Positions 7,560 through 45,454 of a stretch of DNA of 46,437 bases are shown one piece after another. The DNA lies in the NCBI RefSeq assembly GCF_001194135.2, contig NC_068996.1, positions 25,476,306 to 25,522,742 of the forward strand, given 5' to 3'. The position numbers and the translations under genes were made by a program. How positions within the stretch are numbered: position 1 is the first letter of the stretch; every line of letters begins with the position of its first letter. Source of the DNA: Octopus bimaculoides (lineage: Eukaryota). Under the pieces are notes generated by a model. The model had not been told where the DNA came from. It saw nothing but the letters and a program-made list of their open reading frames with translations, and made no database searches.

Positions 7560-8950
7560 TTATCCAATGTGATTTGGGGGTCGTTTGAATCAGCTAGAGT
7601 GTGTTGTCCTGGACTTCCAAGTCTATATAAGCCAATACAGCATACCCAGAAGTGTCGTCCCCATAAAAGCGTCACCTGGAGGTAAACCGCCCTCTCGTCC
7701 TCTCCCCAATTTTTTCACGTGTGGGAGGTCGAAGGAATGAACAACCACTTGTATACTAATATAACTCTATTAGCAAATCTATGTGGGGGAGGTGGCCTGT
7801 ATTAGTGTAGTTATGGTGAGGAAATACTTGATGAATCTTGAGAGAAAACAAAACATTGAGTACGGACTATAATTACGGTGTGAGGGAGAAAGTTTGGAGA
7901 ATCCAGCGTTTCGGTGAGTGCGTGTATAGCGGAGCAAGGGGGGGGGGTTCTTTCGTCAAGATAAAGAAAAAAAGAAACGGAAAAGAAAATTTACGTGGAA
8001 AGTAGCGCTGTTGGATAGTAACGGCGACTGGGAAGGAAAAGGATGAGAAGATAACGATACAATTGGAGGAGGAATATTAGCGCGCGTGTATGTTTTATAT
8101 ATACACACACACATTCTGTATGTGTGTGCACATGTTTGTATGTGTAAGTGAAAGGGAGATGAAGGCGCCCACACTTGATCTTGTTTCACTTTTATTCTTA
8201 TCAGCTACCATTAGGCGTCAGTCGAATACGCCCAAACTGTTGTGTTTATTGCCGGTTGATTCTCACTTGACTTAAGCGTTAGTCGTTCAAACCAAACGTT
8301 ACGTTTAAATATAAAACGTTTAATTAAGAAACTCTGGTCAGCTCTGCTCGGGAAAACCTATTTCAGATGAATGGAGAATTAGTTTGACGGTGAGAATTTG
8401 GTTGCTACTGCAAACAGGTACTCCTACTTCCACCATCGAGACGCAAATATTTTGTTTCGTCTCAGGTCAGCCGCTGGTCCAGCAGGCATCTTATTCAAAA
8501 ATGTTCTGTTGCGTTGTTCTTGTTATCGTTCTTTATCCACAAATCAACTCTAATAGAACAAATCAAAAGTATTCTAGCCATCATCAACCAATAATTTTTT
8601 CCAGCAGTACATTTCCCAGTGTATCTTATCCATTCTAAAGACGTTAAGGTTGTGTATCCTATCTTTTATTCCGTTTGAATATATCTAAAACTAATCCAAA
8701 GCTTACTGGCTCACATTTGTTTTTAAGGATAAAAGGATGGAATTTGGTTGATATTTCTAGCAGATCGAGTGTCCACGTATTAGGCTCCCTTGTTTTATCA
8801 ATAAATTTAAATAGCGCTCGTCTTTTTAAGGGGGAGGTAACTCAGAAGAGTATTCTTGCAGTTCCGAAAGAAGACTACTGCAAGTTGGGACACGAACAGT
8901 AGACTAGAAAATATCCTGATTTATAAAGATTTACATATCGCCATCATTCT
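7560..8950. promoter_or_regulatory. CpG-retaining unique region, candidate promoter / first-exon zone
   Basis: Visibly high CpG density against CpG-depleted flanks, no recognisable repeat; plus-strand donors CG|GTGAGT (7914) and CG|GTGAGA (about 8389), acceptor TTTTGTTTCGTCTCAG (8465). Confidence 0.45.
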
Positions 8951-9276
8951 TTTTAAAAATGTGTGTGTGTGTGCACGTGTTCACTTATTTTAATTTAAAG
9001 TAAATTTTGACCAGCTACCTACTTGCTAGCAATCTTATGAAAGAAAACCTCTTGTTTCGTTAATCATCCTTTATATCTTAAGAAGGTCTTGCAGATTTTT
9101 ATTGTCCTAGATATTGTGATCTTTTGCAGTGTATGAATTAAAGATTTGTATTCTCTTTCCAAGATCCTATGTTCCGCCATTACTTTGTTCCAGATGGGTT
9201 GGTATGTATCTTGTTCCTCCAGGCATGAAGTTGAAAGTACTAGGTTTGCAAACTCCCTATCAATGATCAATAGATG

Positions 9277-9662
9277 TTTAGGAGAGTGGGTTATATATCT
9301 TTAGATATACACCTAACTCTCCTACATTAAATTGGAAGAGAACTGAACGCAGAAACTCCAAACTGATCAACAACAACAAATATTTATTGTTCGGTGGAAA
9401 AGGAAAACAGCTTCTAATTGTCCGGTTTTAAAGTAGCCTGAAATGTAGATGTACGGTTCTTCGTGTTGGTGTCGTTATAAAGACAACTTGGTTCAACCAC
9501 ACTCAAATGGGAGAGCTTGCTTAGACGTCTTGCTTGGTCGTTGTCTGCCTTTGTAAGAGACCGAATAAATAGCGGGAATGCTTCGATGTTGAAACCCAAT
9601 CATGCGTGGTTAAGGATTCAGCAATGGCGTCGGCCTTTTGGCGCCAATGTGACGTCACTACA
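9277..9662 (-). mobile_element. Solo-LTR-like insert A (386 bp), probably Gypsy-type
   Basis: 4-bp TSD GATG (9273-9276, 9663-9666); minus 5' end TGTAGTG; AATAAA 9383-9388; terminal hairpin 9277-9326; removal restores LINE frame KVYIY*SLIGSLQ. Confidence 0.75.
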
Positions 9663-12157
9663 GATGTACACTTTCTTCTGTATTTTTCTAACCACATTGG
9701 TGTCCAGAGGGCAGCTGATTTCCACAACAGAACATATCTTTTCGTTGTGGTCCCACACAATATCTGGCTGGTTGGGTTTTAACTTGGTGGCTATTTTCAT
9801 TTCTAAGTTCCACCAACATTCTTTTAATCCATTGGTCTCAATATAGTCAACATTATTTGTAGGTGTATTCTTTTTTGTTGTTCTGATCCAGACTGTTGTG
9901 ACCACTGCATCATGCCTCATGCATGGGAAGATTATATCTGGAAGACATTCCCTCACAGTTGGCAATAATATGGTTGACATCTTGGTCTTACACAGCCTAC
10001 ATTTGTTGCCTATCAATGTTTTCTGCCTTTTATGTTGTAGGCACTTAGTGGAAATCTCTTGGTAGCCTTCAAAGAGGGATGTCATAAACTTGTTACTACT
10101 CCGTGCCAAGCTTTTGACATGATCAATCCCATCTATGGTTTGCGTTTTTCATGTGAAATACCCATGTACTATCTTCTCAATGAGTTGGTCCATCTTTTTA
10201 TTTTGTTGTTATAAGTAGAATTTACCAATACTTCTTGGAGAGAAATCTGTATCAGCTCTTATTTCACACCTCTCCTCAAGTTCATTAGCTAGCCTAATTA
10301 TATTATTGGTTTCGTGGTCACAAACTGGGCAAGATAGTCACTAGTCTCTTTCCTCTGCTGCAGATGTTTCAGTTTCACAATACATGCTTCATATCATGTC
10401 AATACAATTTTGAGACCACAGCCACCATCCTTGTGTGGGAAGTATAACCTGTCTACATCTCCATTGATGTTGAAGTTTCCTGTAACACTGAACTGCTAGC
10501 AAGTTCAAACAATTATCTCATTGAGTTCTTTTAGTGACCCAATTCAGAAGAACAGATGTTGGTGTGAGGACAGGCACTGCAAAAGTGTTATGGGCAATAT
10601 GCTTGTTGTAAGTTGAGACTTCTGATGACCATATTCTCTTTACTCTCCTGAGGTGTTCATTTCTGATCCCTTCCTTATTTATGGCTCCATCATATCTGAC
10701 ATTCTTATCTTGTCCAAGATTATAATTGTTATCTGACTGTAGAGGTTGTATTGCCAGGCCATTCAGTTCTAGGTTTTCAGAAGAGGGCACAACTTTTCCG
10801 CATTCTATTGTTAGTAGAAAATTGGATAATGAGCTCTAATTGCATTTTATTATGGTTGATACTTGGCTCATGTAGTTTCAGGTCATCAATAAAGAAAAGA
10901 TGGGAGATACTTCTGGATCCATTGCTATGGCCACAATGCTTTGTGGACAGGTATGATAGTGAATTTAATGAGAGGACAGAGGGCAACACTGACAGGCTAT
11001 CACTCTGAAAGATGCCTTTTTGGTAGTGAATGCTATTCAATTCAGTTTTATCCTTATCATTCCTAAGGAGTAAAGTGATGTACTAAGATTTGGTCAGGTA
11101 TTTAATAGCACTCACTAGTGGTTGTGGGACTTTGGCTAACTGTAAGACCTTAAGAATCCACTCATGTGATATACTCTCAAAAGCCTTCTGGTAATCCAGC
11201 TACTCTACAATTAAGTTCCTGTGATTTTTTTCTGTGTTTTCTTTTCTTTTTGTTAATTAGTAGCTGCTATATATGGTCCTACACTTTCTTTTCTCAAGCT
11301 TGCTCAGGTGTTGTTGATGGCACACTGATCTTGTAAGAATAGATTGTGGCACCCTGTGTAAAATTTGTTCAATGATATTCTGGTAGGCTATTGGGCTATA
11401 ATTTTTAGCAAGGGTTGTCTGGCTCTTCTTGGGGAGGAGGAGAGTAGTTGCAGTTGATAACCAATGAGGTAGTTCTTGTGTGCCTTTGGTACTTTCTCTA
11501 TACAACTGTATAAGATCTTGCCAATAAAAGTTGAAATTCTTCAGCCTTTATGAGGTCTGGGCCTGGGGATTTCCTGTTTGACATTTTCTGTAGAACTATT
11601 TTGAGTACTTCAGCATCTATTTCATATTGCTTTTGTTGGACATACTGGCAGTAGTCCTGTTCCAATTCTTTTAGCCATACAGCTTGTTTTTTGAACTCAT
11701 TATTTGTTTCCCATACAGATCTCCAGTAGCACCTCAACTTGATCTTTTGTGGGGGTGTCTTTTACATAGATTGACCCTTTTGCATTGAAACTGCAGTAAA
11801 TTATGTACCAGATCTCTGACACATAATTTATTGAGCATTTGCCACTTATATATTGTATATTTGTAATTTTAGTTTTTCATGTGTAGCTGTGAGTTGTTTC
11901 AGCACGTGCAGTTTAGAGGTTAGGTTTTTGAATCCTGTATCACCAAGTTATCTCTCTAGGTCTTCCTGTTCTCTGTGTTCATTTCATACCTATAACTATC
12001 TGTGAGATATTTTTTCACAGGAATAAAGTTTTATTTTTTAAGTAATGTACTGATGCTGGTTCAAGCTTTCAACTTGAATCTTGATTGCATGGTTTCAGCT
12101 CTTTGTGATACACGAGTAATGTAATAGCTGAGACATATAACTAAAAATTAATAATTT

Positions 12158-12607
12158 TGTAGTGGCGCGAAATTATAGCCGCCATTGAGGAAGTACTATC
12201 TGCACATGTGCAAGGGACTTGCCTTTCCGGAAGCCACTTGAGTGAGCATGCATAGTAAAACTAGTAGTTAAAGAGTTGGTTTCACTTTGTAAGTCAGTTG
12301 AGCGAGAGACCTTCGACGTGACAATACCTCGCTCCTCCACGAAGCACTCTTCACCACGATGCCTTCGATGGTGATAGCTACTTGTTTTTCTGGCAGGCAT
12401 CAAGGAAGCCCTTAACCTTCCATTACCAAACTACAACTTAATCAGCGGCTGCTAAGCTGAATGACAGGAATTGTGAAACCAAGCATCATCATAAATAAAA
12501 CCTTTTTATTATATTGTTAATTGTTCTAATGTCTCTTCATATATAATGCTGTTGAAAGGTGATAGAGAGAGACTAAAGTCTCTATGACAACTATCAAAAC
12601 TTTTACA
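12158..12607 (+). mobile_element. Solo-LTR-like insert B (450 bp), probably Gypsy-type
   Basis: TGTA...TACA termini, 4-bp TSD ATTT (12154-12157, 12608-12611), AATAAA 12494-12499, terminal hairpin 12550-12607; removal restores LINE frame KTYEIINF*LYVSAIT. Confidence 0.8.
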
Positions 12608-13462
12608 ATTTCATAGGTTTTCATACTTCTAGACTGTGCAGTCTTCAGATAATTGTTTGCTATTTCGTTTACTGCCATTAATTTTAATTTACTGGGTTCT
12701 TTACTTTTGCTGCTGTTGTATGGCCTGTCATTCAAATTAAGGTTGAGGGCCTATTGAAACATTTTTCCAGATCACTTGTAAGGAGGCATCAACAAGTTTT
12801 TGGTGCTCTGTTTATACAGTATAGGTATGAATTTCAACTAAATTGTTGGTGTGTTGTTTACTGCTAGACTTAGCTGACCATTCTGTCTGTCCATCAGTGG
12901 AAGTGGGATGATTATCTTAAATGACTGGCTTTATAGTGCAGCCAGCCTGCCTTGCATCAGAGATTTCTATTAGACGTATCAAATTACATCTAATGATATG
13001 TTTTGCTTGTTCATTTAAATGTTTTGGTGAAAAATCTAATTTGGGTGTTTGGAGTTCCACAAATTTTTTAGCATTTGCATAAACCAAACTTTTGGGGGTC
13101 AGGTTGTATATATACTTCATATAAATGTTTGTTAAGATTCTAGGTCCATTGCATACAGTGATTGTAGTCACAATTTGGTAAAGAAGACTTATACATTTAG
13201 CCATGATGATTTTGTCTGTTCACTGATATTTGTATTTGTTTCTCAAAATAAACAATGATTATTTTTTAAAACTTTGACAAAGTTTTGTCAGAATTAAATT
13301 TAAAGTTGTTCACAGCATGGGTAATCTTTCCTTTCAGGTTGTTTTTAATTCTACAATTGTATTTAAACATACATATTGAGTGGTGTTTGTCGTTCTTGTG
13401 TCTTTTTCTTTTATGTATGTATGTATATGTGAATGTGCGTGTGTCTGTGTGCACGCATGCAT

Positions 13463-13498
<36 letters not shown>

Positions 13499-13632
13499 CT
13501 CCTCGTCCTCGTCCTCGTCCTCGCCCTCCTCGTCCTCGTCCTCCTCCTCCTCCTTGTCCTCGTCCTCGTCCTCCTCCTCCTCCTTGTCCTCGTCCTCGTC
13601 CTCCTCGTCCTCGTCCTCCTCCTCCTCACCAC

Positions 13633-13704
<72 letters not shown>

Positions 13705-13859
13705 NNNNNNNNNNNNNNNNNNNNNNNNNNNNNNNNNNNNNNNNNNNNNNNNNNNNNNNNNNNNNNNNNNNNNNNNNNNNNNNNNNNNNNNNNNNNNNNN
13801 NNNNNNNNNNNNNNNNNNNNNNNNNNNNNNNNNNNNNNNNNNNNNNNNNNNNNNNNNNN

Positions 13860-14879: not shown

Positions 14880-16050
14880 TTATAGCAAAAGAAACATCTG
14901 AAATATGGCAAATATTGTAAGATATATTGTTGAGACTTATTCATAGTTCTTTACAGAACCAATTAAATAAAAAGGATAGAAGAAATCAAATGGTAATCTG
15001 CTATTTTGTAAGGGAGCTCCTGTAAAATACTCCAAAGCTGGTTCAGAAACATCTTGAAATGCTACAGACATTACCAGTTCAATACTGTATCTTTTTCATA
15101 GTTTGTTGGATCACACTGTAATAATATTATCTTTAGTTTTCCATAGACTAAAAAAATCTCAATAATCTTTGGCTGAGGATTACTACTTATGGATACAGCT
15201 TTAGAATATGATACTTGTATTTGCATTCCTGTAACAACTTGGGTGCACTGATCTGGTGCTTCAAACTGAGACTGTGGAGGTTTATTCTGTTTATATATTG
15301 TCAACCAGTCAGCAACAAACTCTACTGGAGAGGTACCAAATATTGCTACATGGGTGGCATTTTGTTGCTGCAGAATATTGCTCATTCCTTCAAGGTTTTT
15401 GCACTGAATACTGAGGTCAGAGAGTTTTAATTTTAAGAAGCAACCAGTCTGCATATCAACTCCAAAAATAACAGGCACTCGATTTTGCCAGAACACAAGC
15501 CATCAGGTGAAGGTTGTAGAATTAATTGTAAGTCAGTTGGTTCAATCAGAGCTTAAATTAATTATCGAATGTCCTGTTGGCAAATTAGTTCTTGTTCCAG
15601 CTAATAATGGTTTCACCCCTTATGTAACCAGGGTTACCACTCCTCTTGAAATTTGTATTATTTTCTGTCTCCATCATTTGAAATTCTGTGGAAGAGGTTT
15701 GAGTAAAAGGTAAATCGGGCTGTGTTAAATTCATTAAATTGAGAGTCAGATGGACTGAAGTGTATAAAATGATAAATAACCTTGTTGACAATATTCATGC
15801 AACTAGAACCAGATAATATAGGAGTAAATTGATTCGTGGAACTGCTGAATTCTGATGGATCAAAGCTACCAAATTTGTTATACATGATGATATTGGATAT
15901 GGCAATTGTATAGTTGCTATTGTATAAGTCAAAACCCAGCTTATTACCTGACTTGTTTCTACGGTTGGATGCACTTACAGTTTTATTCAATAACGTTTCA
16001 ATTATTTGAAGTCTTCCTATAAGAAGGAAATGGTTTTTAACAAAGTTGCA
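14880..16050 (-). pseudogene. TCTN: Tectonic-family (TCTN1/2/3-like) intronless pseudogene, C-terminal half
   Basis: Stitched minus frames: PILSGSSCMNIVNKVIY; RSGNPGYIRG/KPLLAG; NRVPVIFGVDMQTGC; THVAIFGTSPVEFVADW; SNPQPKII; SVAFQDVSEP..NSRLPFDFFYPF (cf. TCTN1 SGNPGYVVGLPLAAG, RTPVLFGYTMQSGC, LNPQAKI, VTFVDVSAP..NARLPFNFFFPF). Frameshifts near 15750, 15614 and 15095; TGA at 15542, 15533, 15503; no introns; 5' limit uncertain. Confidence 0.88.
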
Positions 16051-16109
16051 AAACTCCACCATTGAAATGTAGATAAAAAACCAAATTCACCTTTTAAACT
16101 TGAGAAAAG

Positions 16110-16310
16110 TAATGCAAATTTTTAGTGTTCCACTTACAGATTGTATTTGTAATGTGCTTGTTAGCTACATTGTGTCACATAGAGAGGTAGTACCTTGACA
16201 ACATTTTGGGGCGTCTGCTAATTAAATGTGTGATGTCTTCCACAGAAGTATGGCATAATCAACATTTCAGATTCATCTTGGGGTTCCAAGAAGTTATGTA
16301 TGTATATTTG
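16110..16310 (-). mobile_element. R4/Dong-like LINE fragment (CCHC zinc knuckle)
   Basis: Minus KC*LCHTSVEDITHLIS..PKMLSRYYLSM*HNVA resembles the CCHC region of the same clade at 32870-33590. Confidence 0.7.
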
Positions 16311-24109: not shown

Positions 24110-24472
24110 TCACATTAAAACTATGTTGGAATTAGACTTGGAAAGTTTGTGAGGAACCCATTGACCCAATTTGCTGACTTTTGCGATGGCATGCAGGTAT
24201 TGATGAATGGTTAAATGACCAAATCCAAGCTTCTCTGCCAGTTCCTCAACAGTTATGATAGGATTTTGTTCCACCAGGGTTTGCAGGGTGTTCTCATCAA
24301 GCTCTGCAGATCTTCCAGGATAAGGCTTGTCTTCTAAGCTGTTGTTTCCAGCACAGAATGTTTGGAACCACCATTGACACTGGCTTGCACTTATTGCCCA
24401 ATCCCCATATACTGCATTAATATTCCTCACACTTTCCGTTGCATTGTTGCCTATATTAAACTCATAAAGTGA
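24110..24472 (-). mobile_element. Mariner transposase N-terminal fragment
   Basis: NATESVRNINAVYG..LEDKPYPGR..TVEELAEKLG..LGQWVPHKL (HTH + WVPHEL motif). Confidence 0.85.
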
Positions 24473-24645
24473 NNNNNNNNNNNNNNNNNNNNNNNNNNNN
24501 NNNNNNNNNNNNNNNNNNNNNNNNNNNNNNNNNNNNNNNNNNNNNNNNNNNNNNNNNNNNNNNNNNNNNNNNNNNNNNNNNNNNNNNNNNNNNNNNNNNN
24601 NNNNNNNNNNNNNNNNNNNNNNNNNNNNNNNNNNNNNNNNNNNNN

Positions 24646-24685
<40 letters not shown>

Positions 24686-24688
<3 letters not shown>

Positions 24689-24845
24689 ATGGGCTTCTTT
24701 CAGTTTCCGTCCACCAAATCCACTCACAAGGCTTTGGTCAGTCTAAGGCTATAATAGAAGACACTTGGCCAAGATGTCATACAATGGGACTGAACCCAGA
24801 ACAGTGTTGTTGGGAAGCAAACTTCTTACCTCACATCCACACCTG
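24686..24845 (-). mobile_element. SINE family A, 5' half
   Basis: Reverse complement of family A head and core. Confidence 0.75.
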
Positions 24846-25251: not shown

Positions 25252-25537
25252 TTATTTGAGGATGGTCATTTTTACTATAAACACATGTATTATTTGGCCT
25301 TCACTTCAGCTTTATTATTAGTTTATTTTGTCAAAGTTCTTTCATCACACATTTTGTGACCTCTTCAATGACAACTTGTTCTTCTTAGAAAAGAAGAACA
25401 AGTTGTTTCTGGCCTTATTCTATTTACTCCATCTTATCTTTCTGTGATACATATTTCTGTCTCTAATAATAATAATAAATCTGAAGTGAAGGCCAAATAG
25501 TACAATTGTTTATTGGCAAAATGACCATCCTCAAATA
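25252..25537. mobile_element. Foldback MITE with about 70-bp TIRs and a central perfect hairpin
   Basis: TTTGAGGATGGTCATTTT..ATTTGGCCTTCACTTCAG is inverted at about 25468-25535; ACAACTTGTTCTTCT / AGAAGAACAAGTTGT at 25371-25406. Confidence 0.75.
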
Positions 25538-30391: not shown

Positions 30392-31638
30392 CAAAAGAAA
30401 CCACAATTTTGCAATATTATTTCATTCACTTAGTTTTACATGTTTACACTCTTATCGCCTTCAAAGCATTCTTCATTTGAAGCAATGCATGGGTCCAGAC
30501 ACATTTACCACTATTGAAAGCAGTGCCGGAACTCTTGCTAAGTAATGCTTTTTAACTGTCATTTTTTCCTTCACTTCTTCCACATCTGCAAAACGTTTTC
30601 CTTTAAGGATCTTTTACATTTGATGGAACAAAAATAGTTGCAGGGAGCAAGATCAGGTGAATAGGGAAGGTGGATAAATGGGGTCATGCCATTTTCGGTC
30701 AAAAACTGTTTCACACTCAAGGTGGTGTGCAATGGTGTATTGTCATGAGGAAACCATCACTCTCCGCTTTGCCAAGTAAAATGTCTGATTAACAGTTTGA
30801 CCAGGTGGAACAAATATTGTGTGGAAAAGTCCTTTCACATCAATGAAACAAGTCAACATCATCTTGACATTGGACTTCACTCGACCCACTTTTTGGGGGC
30901 ATGGTGACATTGAATGCGTCCATTGACTTGACTGCTGCTTCATTTCTGGGTTGTAGCCATAGAACCAGCTTTTGTCACCAGTGATGACCTTCAAAAAATG
31001 GTCCGGATTAACTTCCAACTGTTCTTTCAGTTCATGACACACATTCAATCATGACTGCTTTTGATTTTCCATGAGCAAGTGAGGCACAAATTTTGCTGCA
31101 ACTCTTTTCATTCCCAATTCCTCGATCAAAATTGGTTGGGAGGAGTTCCAGGACACACTACTCAAATAAACAAGTTCGTCAACTGTTTGGTGACAGTTTT
31201 CTAAGATCAGTTCATGAATTTCCATGATGTTTTCATTCGTCTAGGAGGTTGACAGTTGCCCTGAATGAGGCTGGACTTCAAGTGACAAGTGACCATTCCT
31301 AAAGTGTGAAACCACTTGTAAACTTGTGTTTTGCTCATGGCAGTGCCTTGCAAGCTGTTTGAAGCATGAGAACTATTTCGGCCATTCTTTTCCCTAGCAG
31401 AAAACAGAATTTCATGAAAGCACACTGTCCCTTCATTTTAGCCATCACAAAAATTGATGAACAGGGGAGAAGTACTGCAAAACAAAGATGCACCATGTCA
31501 CAGTATGACATCACCTGCCGCCAGTCAGTAGACTGATGCCTGAAGGTCACATGAAGTGGCTTCTAGTGGCAGAAGCCTGAACTACAATGGACTTGTCCTA
31601 TAGGGAATGTTTCCAGTTACTTTTGGATATTCCCCTTG
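30392..31638 (-). mobile_element. Mariner DNA transposon, near full length, decayed
   Basis: TA at 30390-30391 and 31639-31640; transposase motifs KTQVYKWF, VITGDKSWFYGYNPEMKQQSSQW, GQTVNQTFY; left TIR partly deleted. Confidence 0.88.
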
Positions 31639-32869: not shown

Positions 32870-33590
32870 AGAATCTGCATCAGTTTCTTTTGCTTTTTCT
32901 ATTTTTTGTGAAACTTTGTGAAGCTCTGTAAAGTTGAGCATTTCTTGGTTTTTGTGAAAATTTGTTGGTATGTAACCTAATGTACCTATGATGATAGGTA
33001 CAATGAAAATTCATAGTCAGTATGCAAGAGCTGTAAATGTTCTCTTTCTCCTGGACTTCTGATTCTACATTCACATCTGTTGGGCAGCTGAACCCTACAA
33101 TAGTGCATGACTTTTGTTCTCTGTCCTGGAGAATAATATCAGGTCTGTTATGTTTGCACTGAATTAATGTTTTTATTAGGATGTTCCACCAATATTCCTT
33201 GTTTTAAAGGTGTGTATACCTACTGGTTCTGACATGTCTTTGATGTATATATCAGGACAGTCCTTCTTGCAAAGATAGCATTGTAAATAGCCTTTGCAAC
33301 TATATCATACCTCAGGGGCAGGTAGTACCTCATAGATATTGTGGGGCAGCTGCTGATCATGTGGATGATATCTTCCACACTGGTATAGCAGAGCTGGCAT
33401 TTTTATGACAATGTGGAGATTTGGTGTTATCTTTGTCCCTCTTGTTTATTAAGTATTTAGTAAGTATCTCCTGTTCCTGGATAACAAAAGCATACCCTTC
33501 TAGGTAGGATGTAATGTATCTATCACAGGTTCAGGAGAGACTACTCTTCTTGTCCATGCTGTTGTTGCCCTCTATTTTATGTATGTATAT
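32870..33590 (-). mobile_element. R4/Dong-like LINE 3' fragment (CCHC + RLE)
   Basis: Minus CQLCYTSVEDIIHMISSCP..RYYLPLRYDIVAKAIY and FIVPIIIGTLGYIP. Confidence 0.8.
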
Positions 33591-35571: not shown

Positions 35572-35845
35572 TAGTATTCACTCTGAGGAAATCTCTCATA
35601 TAGGTGTCTGGTGTATAAAAACACAGAGATGTTGGTTGTAGATTAAAAATGTCAAGCATTGGTGGGCAGAACAGTTATATCATGTGATTTCAGTAGATAC
35701 CTGTTGCTGATGAAGTGTAATACATACTGAAATCACATGATAGAACAATTCTGCCCACCAGTGCTTGAAATTTCTCATCTGCTAATATCTCTGACTTCTT
35801 ATACATTAGACACGTATATAAGAGACTTTCTCAGGGTGAATACTA
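35572..35845. mobile_element. Foldback element (about 123-bp arms, 29-nt loop), TA-flanked MITE-like
   Basis: TAGTATTCACTCTGAG..TCAAGCATTGGTGGGCAGAACAGTTATATCATGTGATTTCAGTA is inverted at 35725-35845; inner 44 bp have 4 mismatches. Confidence 0.8.
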
Positions 35846-36667
35846 GAAGCAACATAATAGATATATTATGTTGCTTCTATAATATATCTATGTTTAGTAG
35901 GGTATAAAGTTTGCCATTTAGTAATAATACTGCCTCCATTGCTAATACTTAATATTTTTTTAAAAAAGAGGAAAAGAAGAAGGAAGAGGAGAAAGGACAT
36001 GCAAACAATATATTGCTCTCTTTCTCTCTCTCTCTTATATATATATTATATATAGGTATATATATGATAAAAGGAGATGAATGAGTTATTTGGTAATGCT
36101 ATGGTTGCTTCATCAAGAATCTTTATTCTGATGCAAACATGGTACAGCCAGTTACACAATATGCACAACATCTACAAGCTATAAGATTATGCAGTATGTT
36201 ATACAATGCTCAACTCATCTGAATTGTTGATTCATCAGCATGTCACTACTTATTTGTATATTTGGTAAGCCTGATGAGTTGAGAGTCACATAATGTATTA
36301 CACAATCTTATAGATTTTTCGCATACTGCACACTTGACTATATATATNNNNNNNNNNNNNNNNNNNNNNNNNNNNNNNNNNNNNNNNNNNNNNNNNNNNN
36401 NNNNNNNNNNNNNNNNNNNNNNNNNNNNNNNNNNNNNNNNNNNNNNNNNNNNNNNNNNNNNNNNNNNNNNNNNNNNNNNNNNNNNNNNNNNNNNNNNNNN
36501 NNNNNNNNNNNNNNNNNNNNNNNNNNNNNNNNNNNNNNNNNNNNNNNNNNNNNNNNNNNNNNNNNNNNNNNNNNNNNNNNNNNNNNNNNNNNNNNNNNNN
36601 NNNNNNNNNNNNNNNNNNNNNNNNNNNNNNNNNNNNNNNNNNNNNNNNNNNNNNNNNNNNNNNNNNN

Positions 36668-38252: not shown

Positions 38253-38298
38253 AAATGTAACCGAATATAAACTGAACTATATAAAGTTTACAACTTAC

Positions 38299-38522
38299 CT
38301 GTCCCATGAAATAAATAGAATTCGCAGTAAGTTCCATATCCGTGCTGAGGTCGATATAGTAGCTGTTTCCTCGTGGGAAAACCACATCATCTGTTGGACA
38401 TGGAACCTTTTCTGAATCCAAAGAATGATAGTCAGCATCACAATTGGCTGATCTTGATTTTGCAACACACCAATTTGCGGGATCTACCCATTCTCTTCCA
38501 TAGGTGGCATTGAATTCTACCT
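38299..38522 (-). CDS. AMN: Amnionless-like, coding exon 2 of 4 found
   Basis: TTCTTTATTATTCAG acceptor, 224 nt (E)VEFNATYGREWVDPANWC..DSEKVPCPTDDVVFPRGNSYYIDL..YFMGQ, GTAAGT donor; cf. AMN WHDPHLW..DAERVPCRHDDVFFP. Confidence 0.93.
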
Positions 38523-38837
38523 CTGAATAATAAAGAATAATTACTTTTATGTGGCATCATTCCACAAATCATATGAATGAAGGTAAGAATCTCATAGTCT
38601 TCAAACAGTAGCAGGGTATATTCCCCCAAGAAATACCAGACAAATTGATGATACCTGGGTATGTTCCAACCAACAATTCTTAATATGTGTTTTGAAATGT
38701 AACTTGGTAGACTTCACCAGGTGATGCTGTTTAGTCGGACATGACACTGGATAAAGGCTTGTCTAAACTTATGTTTATATTTGACTACACGCATGCACAC
38801 ATGCATGCATGCACACACACACACACACACACGTTTT

Positions 38838-39247: not shown

Positions 39248-39430
39248 CAGCATTTACTGTCCTTCTTCTATGATGGCATAGGATGGACAATTTGACAAGT
39301 TCTGATGAGCCAGTGAATGCCAAAGAATGCCAAAGCAGGCATTGAAGCTTGAATGTTTGCTTTGGCATTCTTTGTATGGCTGGATGCACTTCCTAATGCA
39401 AAATACTTTTCCTAATTTCAAAATGCCTTT

Positions 39431-39670
39431 CTTAACATCAAGATGTCCTTCTTAAAGCCAAGATGACCTTCCTAAAACTAAGATGACCCTCCTAAAACCA
39501 TGATGACCTACTTAAAGCCAAGATGACCTTTCTAAAGCCAAGATGACCTTCCTAAAGCCAAGATGACCTTTTTAAAGCAAAGATGACCTTCTTAGAGCCA
39601 AGATGACCTACTTAAAGCCAAGATGACCTTCCTAAAGCCAAGATGACCTTCCTAAAGCCAAGATGGCCTT
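39431..39670. repeat. Minisatellite, 12 x 20 bp, consensus CYTAAAGCCAAGATGACCTT
   Basis: 12 contiguous units counted, no spacers. Confidence 0.95.
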
Positions 39671-40248
39671 CTCTGTATGTGCACAACTGTGTAGGTACAG
39701 TATGGCTGAATAGTCGAGAAGTTTCCTTTGCTACCATGAGGTCATAATTTCAATTCTGATGCATGGCATCTTGGGCAAGTCTCTTTTTCCCTCTATAATT
39801 AAGTAATAATGTTTGTTTTTCTCTTTTAACTGATAAAGTGAAAATATCTTAAACAAATGTCAGGGTAGGTCTTGTTTTGGAGGTAAGCCAAAACAAGTCT
39901 ATATTTGTTCCAGTGATGCCCCTTAACATACCCTAATCATCTTTTAACATAAGTGTTTTCCCTGTAGGCATTGATTAAACAGATGGTCATTGTTCAGATT
40001 TGGGCAAGACTTCCTTTTGTACCCCCCCAAAACACCCCTTTTTTTAATTTAATTTTTTTTTTCTACACAAACCCCTGTTTTCGGCTATGGAGAATACGAA
40101 TCTGCAAAAAAATTGGCAAAAATTGGCATTACCTCCCCCTACCTCCACTAAATTCTTCATTTTTACTTTTTTCAGAATTTTTTTTTCAAAATATACGGAA
40201 AAATACGGAGATAATGATTCTGAAAAAAATTTCAAAATGTTTTTCTAC

Positions 40249-40368
40249 TTAGGGTTAGGGTTAGGGTTTTAGGGTTATGGTTTTAGGGTTATGGTTAGGG
40301 TTAGTTTTAGGGTTTTAGGGTTAGGGGTAGAGTTTTAGGGTTAGGGTTAGGGTTTTAGGGTTAGGGTT
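40249..40368 (+). repeat. Interstitial telomeric-type (TTAGGG)n with TTTTAGGG/TTATGG variants
   Basis: Directly visible. Confidence 0.9.
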
Positions 40369-40928
40369 ACCGAAAAAAGTGAAAAACGACGAAATTGTTG
40401 GGGGTGGGNNNNNNNNNNNNNNNNNNNNNNNNNNNNNNNNNNNNNNNNNNNNNNNNNNNNNNNNNNNNNNNNNNNNNNNNNNNNNNNNNNNNNNNNNNNN
40501 NNNNNNNNNNNNNNNNNNNNNNNNNNNNNNNNNNNNNNNNNNNNNNNNNNNNNNNNNNNNNNNNNNNNNNNNNNNNNNNNNNNNNNNNNNNNNNNNNNNN
40601 NNNNNNNNNNNNNNNNNNNNNNNNNNNNNNNNNNNNNNNNNNNNNNNNNNNNNNNNNNNNNNNNNNNNNNNNNNNNNNNNNNNNNNNNNNNNNNNNNNNN
40701 NNNNNNNNNNNNNNNNNNNNNNNNNNNNNNNNNNNNNNNNNNNNNNNNNNNNNNNNNNNNNNNNNNNNNNNNNNNNNNNNNNNNNNNNNNNNNNNNNNNN
40801 NNNNNNNNNNNNNNNNNNNNNNNNNNNNNNNNNNNNNNNNNNNNNNNNNNNNNNNNNNNNNNNNNNNNNNNNNNNNNNNNNNNNNNNNNNNNNNNNNNNN
40901 NNNNNNNNNNNNNNNNNNNNNNNNNNNN

Positions 40929-44945: not shown

Positions 44946-44961
44946 ATATATATATATATAT

Positions 44962-45298
44962 ATGTAGATATATAAAAAGATAAAGAGAGCAATGGTAAGG
45001 TTGGAAATATATTTTATGGATAGAGTCTTACAGCTGTTTCTGGGAAGATCCAGTATTTCCCTTCATCGGAGACAGAAATAGTAAAGGAATCGATTATTAT
45101 ATCCATAGGAGGAGAGTTTTAGTATGAAGTGATAGTGAATGTGATCCGCCTATGGATATAATAATCGATTCCTTTACTATTTCTGTCTTCGATGAAGGGA
45201 AGTACTGGATCTTCCCAGAAACAGCTGTAAGACTCTATCCATAAAATATATTTCCAACCTTACCATTCCTCTCTTTATCTTTTTATATATTTATACAT
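44962..45298. mobile_element. Young foldback element (about 150-bp arms, 31-nt loop)
   Basis: 44962-45113 is the reverse complement of 45145-45298 with only about 5 mismatches. Confidence 0.9.
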
Positions 45299-45454
45299 AC
45301 ACACGCTAATACATGACTTATAATCCCCAATCCTGTTCATACAACGACTGGGGCAAAACTAGTCGGTATACAGCACTTACTCAGTATTACCTGTATCCTC
45401 TAGGGTTTGGTTAAATCCAATACCCTCCTCAACCTTGTATATATATATATATAT

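What the first reader, a model, noticed from the sequence alone, without database searches (positions are those of the whole stretch)
9277..12607. Two diverged LTR-like inserts share a conserved architecture ending in a TGT...ACA-bounded hairpin with a C-TAAA-G loop
Seen: insert A (minus, 9662 to 9277) and insert B (plus, 12158 to 12607) look dissimilar internally. Both begin TGTAGTG, carry GGCGC[CG]AAA then CGCCATTG, place AATAAA 106-108 nt from the 3' end, and finish in a 50-58 nt inverted repeat (9277-9326; 12550-12607). The stems differ (GTATATC/GATATAT vs AGAGAC/GTCTCT) but the loop C-TAAA-G is identical. Established: TG..CA ends with 4-bp TSDs typify Gypsy integrases. Inference: structure conserved despite sequence change suggests a functional U5 element (3'-end processing, packaging, or a duplicated att-like site), possibly an undescribed LTR lineage or a short non-autonomous mobile unit.
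Basis: partly seen in the sequence, partly recalled or inferred. Interest (0 to 1): 0.72.

Follow-up and report, generated by a model that had tools for sequence, protein, structure and literature searches.

The report
Two related solo LTRs in octopus
Two short inserts in an Octopus bimaculoides locus are most likely leftover end-pieces (solo LTRs) of two related Gypsy-type retrotransposons. They share an ordinary LTR layout plus a conserved terminal hairpin that may help start reverse transcription; this is a modest, not a surprising, finding.

Summary
Insert A (minus strand, 9662→9277, 386 nt) and insert B (plus strand, 12158→12607, 450 nt) are discrete insertions with 4-bp target duplications (CATC; ATTT).

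For A this is well supported. Removing exactly 390 nt restores an uninterrupted, in-frame alignment of the disrupted non-LTR reverse-transcriptase gene to intact homologues.

A and B share:
- a significant 5' block (TGTAGTG…TGGCGCSAAA-N7-CGCCATTG);
- AATAAA 106/108 nt from the end;
- a 17-nt block;
- a 46–53-nt hairpin capped by C-TAAA-G that stops 2 nt before the element end. Five of the seven inner-stem pairs are changed on both sides.

Their middles are unrelated.

The window is Octopus bimaculoides. Its LTR elements are essentially all Gypsy, dominated by the CsRN1 and Mag-A/B clades. CsRn1-like elements make 4-bp duplications and have TGT…AAA ends, as A does.

Best reading: two solo LTRs of related Gypsy families with the standard U3–R–U5 plan. 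The hairpin is a U5-terminal element comparable to the retroviral and Tf1 U5-IR stem-loop. Its function is inferred, not shown.

No further copies could be retrieved, so the covariation rests on two sequences. "Undescribed lineage" is not supported. I rate it a new member of a known kind, of low to moderate interest.

The parts
9277..9662 (-). Insert A: 386-nt solo LTR (TGTAGTG...CCTAAA)
   Evidence: Sequence read. It is single-copy in the window. Removing it plus 4 nt restores the host ORF alignment. CpG observed/expected is 0.97, against 0.07 in the host element.
9663..9666 (-). Target-site duplication of A, 5' copy (CATC)
   Evidence: The register is ambiguous by +/-2 nt because ACATCT is shared at both junctions.
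9273..9276 (-). Target-site duplication of A, 3' copy (CATC)
9622..9662 (-). A 5' (U3) end: att TGTAGTG, CRE palindrome TGACGTCA (9657-9650), then the 25-nt block TGGCGCCAAAAGGCCGACGCCATTG
   Evidence: The E2F-like (TTTGGCGCC on the opposite strand) and YY1-core (GCCAT) readings rest on my own knowledge and are not tested.
9383..9388 (-). A polyadenylation signal AATAAA, followed by a GT-rich stretch
   Evidence: The layout is as in PMC3601003.
9325..9341 (-). A conserved pre-hairpin block TCTCTTCCAATTTAATG
9279..9324 (-). A terminal three-tier hairpin (9 + 3 + 7 bp), loop C-TAAA-G at 9304-9299, ending 2 nt before the LTR end
12158..12607 (+). Insert B: 450-nt solo LTR (TGTAGTG...TTTTACA)
   Evidence: CpG observed/expected is 0.64.
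12154..12157 (+). Target-site duplication of B, 5' copy (ATTT)
12608..12611 (+). Target-site duplication of B, 3' copy (ATTT)
12158..12187 (+). B 5' (U3) end: TGTAG + TGGCGCGAAATTATAGCCGCCATTG
12494..12499 (+). B polyadenylation signal AATAAA, followed by a T/GT-rich stretch
12532..12548 (+). B conserved pre-hairpin block TCTCTTCATATATAATG
12553..12605 (+). B terminal three-tier hairpin (6 + 6 + 6 bp), loop C-TAAA-G at 12573-12578, ending 2 nt before the LTR end
9073..11947 (-). Host element: a degenerate non-LTR retrotransposon (reverse transcriptase, zinc-binding region and C-terminal PD...E motif) interrupted by A. It is context, not part of the LTRs.

Best explanation
A and B are solo LTRs left by two different but related families of Ty3/Gypsy LTR retrotransposons of Octopus bimaculoides. 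The clade is most likely CsRN1, otherwise Mag-A/B.

Shown:
- Each is a discrete insertion bounded by a 4-bp target duplication. That is the footprint of a DDE integrase.
- Both are far less CpG-decayed than the old non-LTR element that A interrupts, so they arrived later.
- They share the ends of the LTR but not the middle.

Inferred layout:
- U3 begins with the integrase site TGTAGTG and a GC-rich 25-nt block. That block has E2F-like and YY1-core motifs, plus a CRE in A. It is a likely promoter or enhancer module.
- A family-specific U3/R region follows.
- AATAAA plus a GT-rich downstream element sets the R/U5 border about 15-25 nt later.
- That gives a retrovirus-sized U5 of about 85-90 nt.
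- U5 ends in a conserved 17-nt block and a 46-53-nt hairpin capped by C-UAAA-G, which stops 2 nt before the LTR end.

Inferred mechanism:
- In a full-length transcript this hairpin would lie directly 5' of the primer-binding site.
- It would act like the U5-IR stem-loop of avian retroviruses and Tf1, or like the U5 stem with the A-rich loop of HIV-1.
- It would hold the template-primer complex in a form that lets reverse transcriptase start minus-strand synthesis.
- Its 3' arm would double as the U5 integrase-binding end.

The internal genes were later lost by LTR-LTR recombination, which keeps the duplication.

Sub-confidences: solo LTRs of LTR retrotransposons about 0.85; Gypsy given that about 0.95; CsRN1 clade about 0.45; hairpin under selection at all about 0.55; U5-IR-like role about 0.3-0.35.
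For: Insertion status:
- A's flanks, joined after removing 390 nt, align without a gap to an in-window paralogue.
- The same joined flanks align in one frame across the junction to four intact homologues, for example ...EKENIYGPLLRNLQ.
- B has a clean ATTT/ATTT duplication at TGT...ACA.

Homology of the ends:
- 5' block z = 4.9.
- The 5' pattern is unique to A and B.
- AATAAA lies at 106/108 nt from the end.
- The 17-nt pre-hairpin block occurs exactly only in A and B, though its relaxed form is not unusual in shuffles.

Hairpin:
- Both stop 2 nt before the end.
- The loop is identical and 5 of 7 inner pairs are changed on both sides.
- They are the only two C-TAAA-G hairpins among 27 perfect hairpins in the window.

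Organism and priors:
- The Tectonic exon is 100% identical to an O. bimaculoides UniRef protein.
- LTRharvest copies in this genome were 100% Gypsy. CsRN1 (15 families) and Mag-A/B (10 families) dominate.
- CsRn1-like elements make 4-bp duplications and end TGT...AAA or ATA, with LTRs of about 380 bp.
- The CsRN1 LTR model has the 5' motif TGTGGYG. The general LTR plan is short inverted ends + AATAAA + a GT-rich stretch.

Age: CpG observed/expected is 0.97 (A) and 0.64 (B), against 0.07 in the host element and 0.26 in the window.

Known analogues: the U5-IR stem-loop is required in Tf1 (reference). The A-rich U5 loop with the tRNA anticodon, and the ASV U5-T-psi-C interaction, are described.
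Against: - No second copy of either family and no full-length element could be obtained. LTR status (paired copies, PBS, PPT) is therefore not shown, and covariation rests on two sequences.
- B's hairpin is not unusually stable (z = -2; 13% of local windows fold as well).
- A's inner stem is (TA)n-like, and sliding partners by +/-2 still pairs 64-70% of cells.
- Sense and antisense strands fold about equally, so an RNA-level role is not favoured over a DNA palindrome.
- The 3' 114 nt are only weakly similar in sequence (z = 2.1).
- B ends ACA rather than AAA/ATA. The 5' motif fits the CsRN1 and Mag-A consensus equally well (one mismatch each), so the clade is open.
Confidence: 0.35

Rival explanations
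1. A and B are solo LTRs as above, but the terminal palindrome is a by-product rather than a selected element. It could arise from template-switch or snap-back mutation that creates and homogenises inverted repeats, or from an inverted duplication of the U5 integrase site. The shared loop and flanking block would then be inherited from a common ancestor.
For: - The fold is as good on the antisense strand.
- B's energy is ordinary.
- A's stem is TA-repeat-like and pairs when slid by 2.
- Perfect short palindromes are not rare in this locus: 27 outside microsatellites.
Against: - Two lineages diverged enough to have unalignable middles keep a three-tier hairpin at the same place, 2 nt from the end.
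- All five variable inner pairs are compensated and the loop is unchanged.
- B's GA/TC stem cannot come from a simple repeat.
Confidence: 0.25
2. A and B are solo LTRs, and the hairpin is functional but in another step. Candidates are definition of the 3' end (pausing or termination downstream of the poly(A) site in the 3' LTR), genome packaging or dimerisation, or integrase recognition of the U5 DNA end.
For: - It lies about 55-105 nt downstream of AATAAA, after a GT-rich element.
- Its 3' arm is the terminal approximately 20 bp that integrases bind (PMC3601003).
Against: - The loop CUAAAG is not self-complementary, as kissing-loop dimerisation sites are.
- U5 downstream of the cleavage site is not in the 3' end of the RNA.
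- Nothing here distinguishes these roles from a role in priming.
Confidence: 0.2
3. A and B are complete short non-autonomous mobile units moved in trans by a Gypsy integrase. They would never have been LTRs of a longer element.
For: - Both are isolated, about 400 nt long, and have their own duplications.
- No internal retrotransposon sequence, PBS or Gypsy protein fragment is present in the window.
Against: - Solo LTRs with intact duplications are the common product of LTR-LTR recombination.
- The layout is exactly U3-R-U5, with a poly(A) signal and a U5-sized tail.
- No mechanism is known that would reverse-transcribe such a unit without a PBS and PPT.
Confidence: 0.07
4. The resemblance is chance: two unrelated inserts that happen to share short motifs picked out after the fact.
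For: - The motifs were chosen post hoc.
- The middles are unrelated.
- The relaxed 3' block with 2 mismatches is not rare in shuffles: 16 of 100 gave two or more matches.
Against: - The 5' similarity was reached by 0 of 2000 shuffles.
- The exact patterns are unique to A and B in the window and in shuffles.
- Both have the same AATAAA-to-end distance, the same hairpin position and the same loop.
- Fourteen chance matches elsewhere have no stem.
Confidence: 0.02

Closest known systems
LTRs of CsRN1-clade Ty3/Gypsy retrotransposons (CsRn1, PwRn1, AgCR; Gypsy-1_OB and 14 further O. bimaculoides families)
   Same: - 4-bp target duplication.
- LTR of about 330-470 bp.
- TGT start, and an ...AAA end in A.
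- 5' end TGTAGTG against the clade motif TGTGGYG.
- The clade is abundant in cephalopods and in this species (PMC2582038, PMC3601003, PMC6238403).
   Different: - B ends ACA.
- The clade's tRNA-Trp PBS, CHCC Gag and RT phylogeny cannot be checked on solo LTRs.
- No hairpin or GC-rich 5' block is described for the clade in the papers read.
LTRs of Mag A/B-clade Gypsy elements (the other dominant clade in O. bimaculoides)
   Same: - TGT...ACA ends.
- AATAAA with a GT-rich stretch after it.
- The 5' motif TGTTRKR differs from TGTAGTG at one position.
- B's last 12 nt fit RMRWMYAYAACA at 10 of 12 positions (PMC3601003).
   Different: - A's AAA end and its 3' sequence fit poorly.
- The duplication length for this clade was not found in the papers read.
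U5-IR stem-loop of avian retroviruses and of the self-priming retrotransposon Tf1
   Same: It is a stem-loop inside U5 placed next to the PBS. In those systems it is needed to start reverse transcription (Lin & Levin 1998, cited in PMC4600332; PMC3601003).
   Different: Here only the position at the U5 end and the compensatory changes are seen. No PBS, no primer and no functional data are available.
HIV-1 U5 stem with the A-rich apical loop
   Same: Both have an A-rich loop (UAAA here) at the top of a U5 stem just upstream of the PBS. [quoted passage not shown]
   Different: The primer of these octopus elements is unknown. CsRn1-like elements use tRNA-Trp, whose loops are not complementary to UAAA (my own recollection of the tRNA sequence). 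This is analogy only.
General LTR plan (Benachenhou et al. 2013, PMC3601003)
   Same: Short inverted ends TGT...ACA, a conserved AATAAA, a GT-rich stretch after it, and a variable U3.
   Different: That plan lists no conserved terminal U5 hairpin and no GC-rich block right after the 5' end.

Membership tests
Solo LTR of an LTR retrotransposon | Discrete insertion flanked by a 4-6 bp target-site duplication | tested here: met
   A: CATC/CATC. Removing 390 nt restores the alignment to a paralogue and to four intact homologues in one frame. B: ATTT/ATTT.
Solo LTR of an LTR retrotransposon | Short inverted termini 5'-TG...CA-3' | tested here: inconclusive
   B is TGT...ACA. A is TGT...AAA, a variant reported for CsRn1-like elements. 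It is not the canonical CA.
Solo LTR of an LTR retrotransposon | U3-R-U5 layout: AATAAA, a GT-rich stretch, and a U5-sized tail | tested here: met
   AATAAA lies 106/108 nt from the end and is followed by GT/T-rich sequence. The plan is described in PMC3601003.
Solo LTR of an LTR retrotransposon | The same sequence occurs as direct pairs flanking gag-pol, with a PBS after the 5' copy and a PPT before the 3' copy | not testable with these tools
   The octopus genome is not in any searchable collection. There is no other copy in the window or in 153 kb of related loci.
Ty3/Gypsy, CsRN1 clade | 4-bp target-site duplication | tested here: met
   PMC2582038.
Ty3/Gypsy, CsRN1 clade | LTR ends TGT...AAA or TGT...ATA; end motifs TGTGGYG / MSYYAMA | tested here: inconclusive
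   A is TGT...AAA and fits 6/7 at both ends. B is ...ACA and fits 6/7 and 5/7. The Mag-A motif fits the 5' end equally well.
Ty3/Gypsy, CsRN1 clade | PBS complementary to tRNA-Trp; CHCC Gag; RT phylogeny | not testable with these tools
   Solo LTRs carry none of these. The PBS motif TGGTGASCCCGW is absent from the window.
U5-IR-type stem-loop | Stem-loop in U5 directly upstream of the PBS | tested here: inconclusive
   In both inserts the hairpin ends 2 nt before the LTR end. The PBS itself is not present.
U5-IR-type stem-loop | Pairing kept by compensatory changes | tested here: met
   Five of seven inner pairs are changed on both sides and the closing C-G is invariant. This rests on n = 2 and on low-complexity stems.
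U5-IR-type stem-loop | Needed for initiation of reverse transcription | not testable with these tools
   This needs experiments.
Any Rfam RNA family (including hammerhead ribozymes of Penelope elements and retrozymes) | Match to a curated covariance model | tested here: not met
   No match at E <= 1 in 8500-13300 on either strand.
TIR DNA transposon / MITE | Terminal inverted repeats longer than a few bases | tested here: not met
   Only TGT/ACA is shared between the ends. The only inverted repeat in A is the local hairpin.
tRNA-derived SINE | tRNA-like head | tested here: not met
   ARAGORN finds no tRNA-like sequence in the window.

The most novel reading that the evidence does not exclude
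The invariant C-UAAA-G loop on a co-varying U5-terminal stem is a lineage-wide primer-selection element of a cephalopod Gypsy lineage. It would be an invertebrate counterpart of the HIV-1 A-rich loop or the ASV U5-IR, pairing with a loop of the primer tRNA. The conserved GC-rich 5' block would be a second cis element rather than a mere set of promoter motifs.
Probability: 0.1. Interest if true: 0.55.

Novelty: new member of a known kind. Interest (0 to 1): 0.3.

Why it matters
Cis-acting RNA structures of invertebrate Gypsy elements are almost unstudied. What is known about U5 structures comes from retroviruses, Ty1/Ty3 and Tf1.

If the hairpin is conserved across octopus Gypsy families, it would give two things. 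It would be a simple sequence-plus-structure signature for annotating solo LTRs in cephalopod genomes. It would also be a testable case of a U5 initiation element outside the model systems.

As it stands, the locus mainly shows two ordinary, relatively young solo LTRs nested in and next to an old non-LTR element near the Tectonic gene.

Tried and rejected
- **Six-frame peptides of A and B against the 5.8-billion-protein collection**, to reach other copies through spurious ORFs: no hit.
- **Exact look-ups of window ORFs and of the octopus Tectonic protein:** not on record.
- **Pattern scans.** The 5' motif in metagenomes gave one GC-rich bacterial chance hit and nothing in viral contigs. The 3' motif in viral and prokaryotic collections gave 14 chance hits without stems.
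- **Seven loci fetched through homologues of the host RT** (Argonauta hians and three ENA assemblies, 153 kb): no A/B-like sequence, motif or C-TAAA-G hairpin with a stem of 6 bp or more; the one 5-bp case, in L020, is unrelated. These assemblies share no SINEs with the window, so they are not close Octopus relatives.
- **Rfam:** nothing.
- **A and B as the two ends of one element:** rejected. The outer flanks give no duplication, the middles are unrelated, and A sits inside the host ORF.
- **A and B as terminal repeats of the host RT element:** rejected. The direct repeats around homologous RT genes in L016 and L020 are just duplicated 3' ends with (ACTT)n or (ACAT)n tails.
- **Coding overlap for the 5' block:** considered. 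The conservation pattern is not codon-like.
- **TGGCGCC as a PBS-like sequence:** considered. It matches only the first 7 nt of a tRNA-Lys-type PBS, and B differs. I read it as an E2F-like site instead, and neither reading is tested.
- **The bacterial promoter/terminator scan** is irrelevant here.
Full report
**What the window is.** It is a eukaryotic draft assembly with N gaps, many microsatellites, mariner fragments and SINE-like repeats. An exon at 15071-15496 (minus) has a Tectonic domain and is 100% identical to a UniRef protein of Octopus bimaculoides. An Amnionless exon lies at about 38296-38556 (minus). The finding therefore sits in non-coding DNA of the California two-spot octopus.

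**Checking the observation.**
- Both inserts begin TGTAGTG.
- Both contain an ungapped 25-nt block, TGGCGCSAAA-N7-CGCCATTG, that is 18/25 identical. In A it is preceded by an extra 11 nt that make a perfect TGACGTCA palindrome.
- The combined pattern occurs only in A and B in the window, even with three mismatches allowed in the 25-nt block, and never in shuffles.
- The first 50 nt are significantly similar (z = 4.9; 0 of 2000 shuffles). The last 114 nt are weakly similar (z = 2.1) and the middles are not similar at all (z = -0.3).
- AATAAA is followed by 106 nt in A and 108 nt in B.
- A further shared block, TCTCTTCNNATNTAATG, lies directly 5' of each hairpin. It is weaker support: its exact form occurs only in A and B, but with two mismatches allowed 16 of 100 shuffles also gave two or more matches.

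**The hairpins.**
- A folds to -21.9 kcal/mol (z = -5.7), among the best 0.18% of 56-nt windows of this locus.
- B folds to -13.7 kcal/mol (z = -2.0), which 13% of local 63-nt windows reach. B's hairpin is unremarkable by energy.
- The case rests on position and form. Both hairpins have three tiers, both end exactly 2 nt before the end of the insert, and both are capped by C-TAAA-G.
- Among 27 perfect hairpins outside microsatellites (stem of at least 6 bp, 4-nt loop), these are the only two with that loop.
- In the inner helix, five of seven pairs differ on both sides between A and B, and the closing C-G is unchanged.
- Caveats: there are only two sequences; A's stem is (TA)n-like; sliding the partners by two columns still pairs 64-70% of cells; and the antisense strands fold about as well. 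An RNA-level role is therefore not distinguished from a DNA palindrome.

**Are they insertions?** For A this is well supported.
- A lies inside the C-terminal region of a degenerate non-LTR reverse-transcriptase gene on the minus strand.
- Homologues of that gene carry Pfam RVT_1, and one (P0005) also a sub-threshold zf-RVT match.
- When 390 nt are removed (386-nt element plus one CATC), the joined flanks align without a gap to a second, diverged copy of the same kind of element at about 33160-32920.
- The joined flanks also align in a single frame across the junction to four intact homologous proteins...KKVYI|Y*SLIGSLQ against ...EKENIYGPLLRNLQ and similar.
- The element is therefore TGTAGTG...CCTAAA with a 4-bp duplication.
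- B has a clean ATTT/ATTT duplication around TGT...ACA, and its flanks are unique in the window.
- CpG observed/expected is 0.97 in A and 0.64 in B, against 0.07 in the host element and 0.26 in the whole window. Both inserts are much younger than their surroundings, or are protected from CpG decay.

**What they are.**
- TGT starts, 4-bp duplications, a length of about 400 nt, an internal AATAAA followed by GT-rich sequence, and a tail of about 85-90 nt after the expected cleavage site make up the general U3-R-U5 plan described for animal Gypsy and retroviral LTRs (PMC3601003).
- There are no long terminal inverted repeats, no tRNA-like head and no Rfam match.
- In O. bimaculoides, de novo detected LTR retrotransposons were 100% Gypsy (275 copies). 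The catalogued families fall mainly in the CsRN1 clade (15 families, 0.138% of the genome) and the Mag A/B clade (10 families, 0.175%) (PMC6238403 and its supplementary file 3).
- CsRn1-like elements always make 4-bp duplications. Their LTRs end TGT...AAA or TGT...ATA, are about 380 bp long, and use a tRNA-Trp primer site (PMC2582038). The LTR model of that clade starts TGTGGYG.
- A fits this well. B fits partly, because it ends ACA. The Mag-A end motifs fit about as well.
- I conclude that A and B are solo LTRs of two related Gypsy families, with CsRN1 the leading candidate clade.
- This remains an inference. Paired copies, PBS and PPT could not be examined.

**How it most likely works.**
- The shared 5' block follows the integrase site directly. 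On the opposite strand it reads TTTGGCGCC or TTTCGCGCC (E2F-type), and it ends in a GCCAT core (YY1-type). A adds a CRE. From general knowledge these look like promoter or enhancer sites of a CpG-rich promoter. This is not tested.
- In a full-length RNA the terminal hairpin would lie in U5, two bases plus any spacer from the primer-binding site.
- Stem-loops at that place are known to be needed for starting reverse transcription. Examples are the U5-IR stem-loop of avian retroviruses and its counterpart in the self-priming Tf1 (reference 17 in PMC4600332), and the HIV-1 U5 stem, whose A-rich apical loop pairs with the primer's anticodon loop (PMC3185550).
- I take this as the most likely role (about 0.3-0.35).
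- The rivals are a role in 3'-end definition, packaging or integrase binding (0.2) and a non-selected palindrome (0.25).

**Attempts to find relatives.**
- The octopus genome is not in any collection I could search. Exact look-ups failed.
- A search with all six-frame peptides of A and B found nothing.
- DNA pattern scans of metagenomic, viral and prokaryotic collections gave only chance matches without stems.
- Through homologues of the host reverse transcriptase I fetched 153 kb from Argonauta hians and three ENA assemblies. None contains anything like A or B.

**Verdict.**
- The interpretation as LTR-like inserts with a conserved terminal structure is supported.
- The suggestion of an undescribed lineage or a new kind of mobile unit is not supported.
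- This is a new member of a known kind. The one detail worth following is the U5-terminal hairpin with its invariant loop.

Noticed in passing
window 15071-15496 (-): Exon with a Tectonic domain (Pfam TCTN_DUF1619, E = 7e-8). It is 100% identical to an Octopus bimaculoides UniRef protein, which identifies the organism.
   Followed up: yes
window ~38296-38556 (-): Exon-like ORF with an Amnionless domain (Pfam PF14828, E = 2e-14). It is a second host gene in the window.
   Followed up: partly
window 9277-12607: The two solo LTRs lie head to head (5' ends facing) only 2.5 kb apart, although LTR elements make up well under 1% of this genome. This could mean a local insertion preference, or that solo LTRs are under-counted.
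   Followed up: no
window ~32920-33402 (-): A second, diverged copy of the same kind of non-LTR RT element that A interrupts. It served as the empty-site comparison.
   Followed up: yes
window 7650-8520: CpG-rich stretch (observed/expected 1.1-1.4 in a genome at 0.26) just beside insert A. It could be a CpG-island-like promoter or another young insert. It has no similarity to A or B.
   Followed up: no
window 24110-24727 (-) and 30743-31048 (-): Mariner-type transposase fragments (Pfam HTH_48 and Transposase_1).
   Followed up: partly
window 25371-25406, 35844-35879, and 44959-45113 with 45145-45299: Two perfect 16-bp stem, 4-nt loop palindromes, and a 155-nt inverted repeat (95% complementary, 31-nt spacer). 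They may be foldback or MITE-like elements.
   Followed up: no
window 40235-40390: Interstitial telomere-like TTAGGG/TTTTAGGG repeats next to an assembly gap.
   Followed up: no
window 14049, 17229, 17470, 20899 (about 74-nt units): SINE-like repeat sharing TTTCTACAGCTGGA.GCCCTTCCTAATGCCAACCACTC. This is consistent with the SINE-rich octopus genome.
   Followed up: no
window 39313-39689: 20-nt tandem repeat array, adjoined at its 5' edge (from about 39313) by the most stable local folds of the window (down to -35 kcal/mol per 56-63 nt).
   Followed up: no
L016 7700-8464 / 13029-13785; L020 8976-9505 / 15622-16151: In related loci the host-type RT genes are flanked by 533-765-nt direct repeats. 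These are duplicated 3' ends of the non-LTR element, ending in (ACTT)n or (ACAT)n tails, not LTRs.
   Followed up: partly
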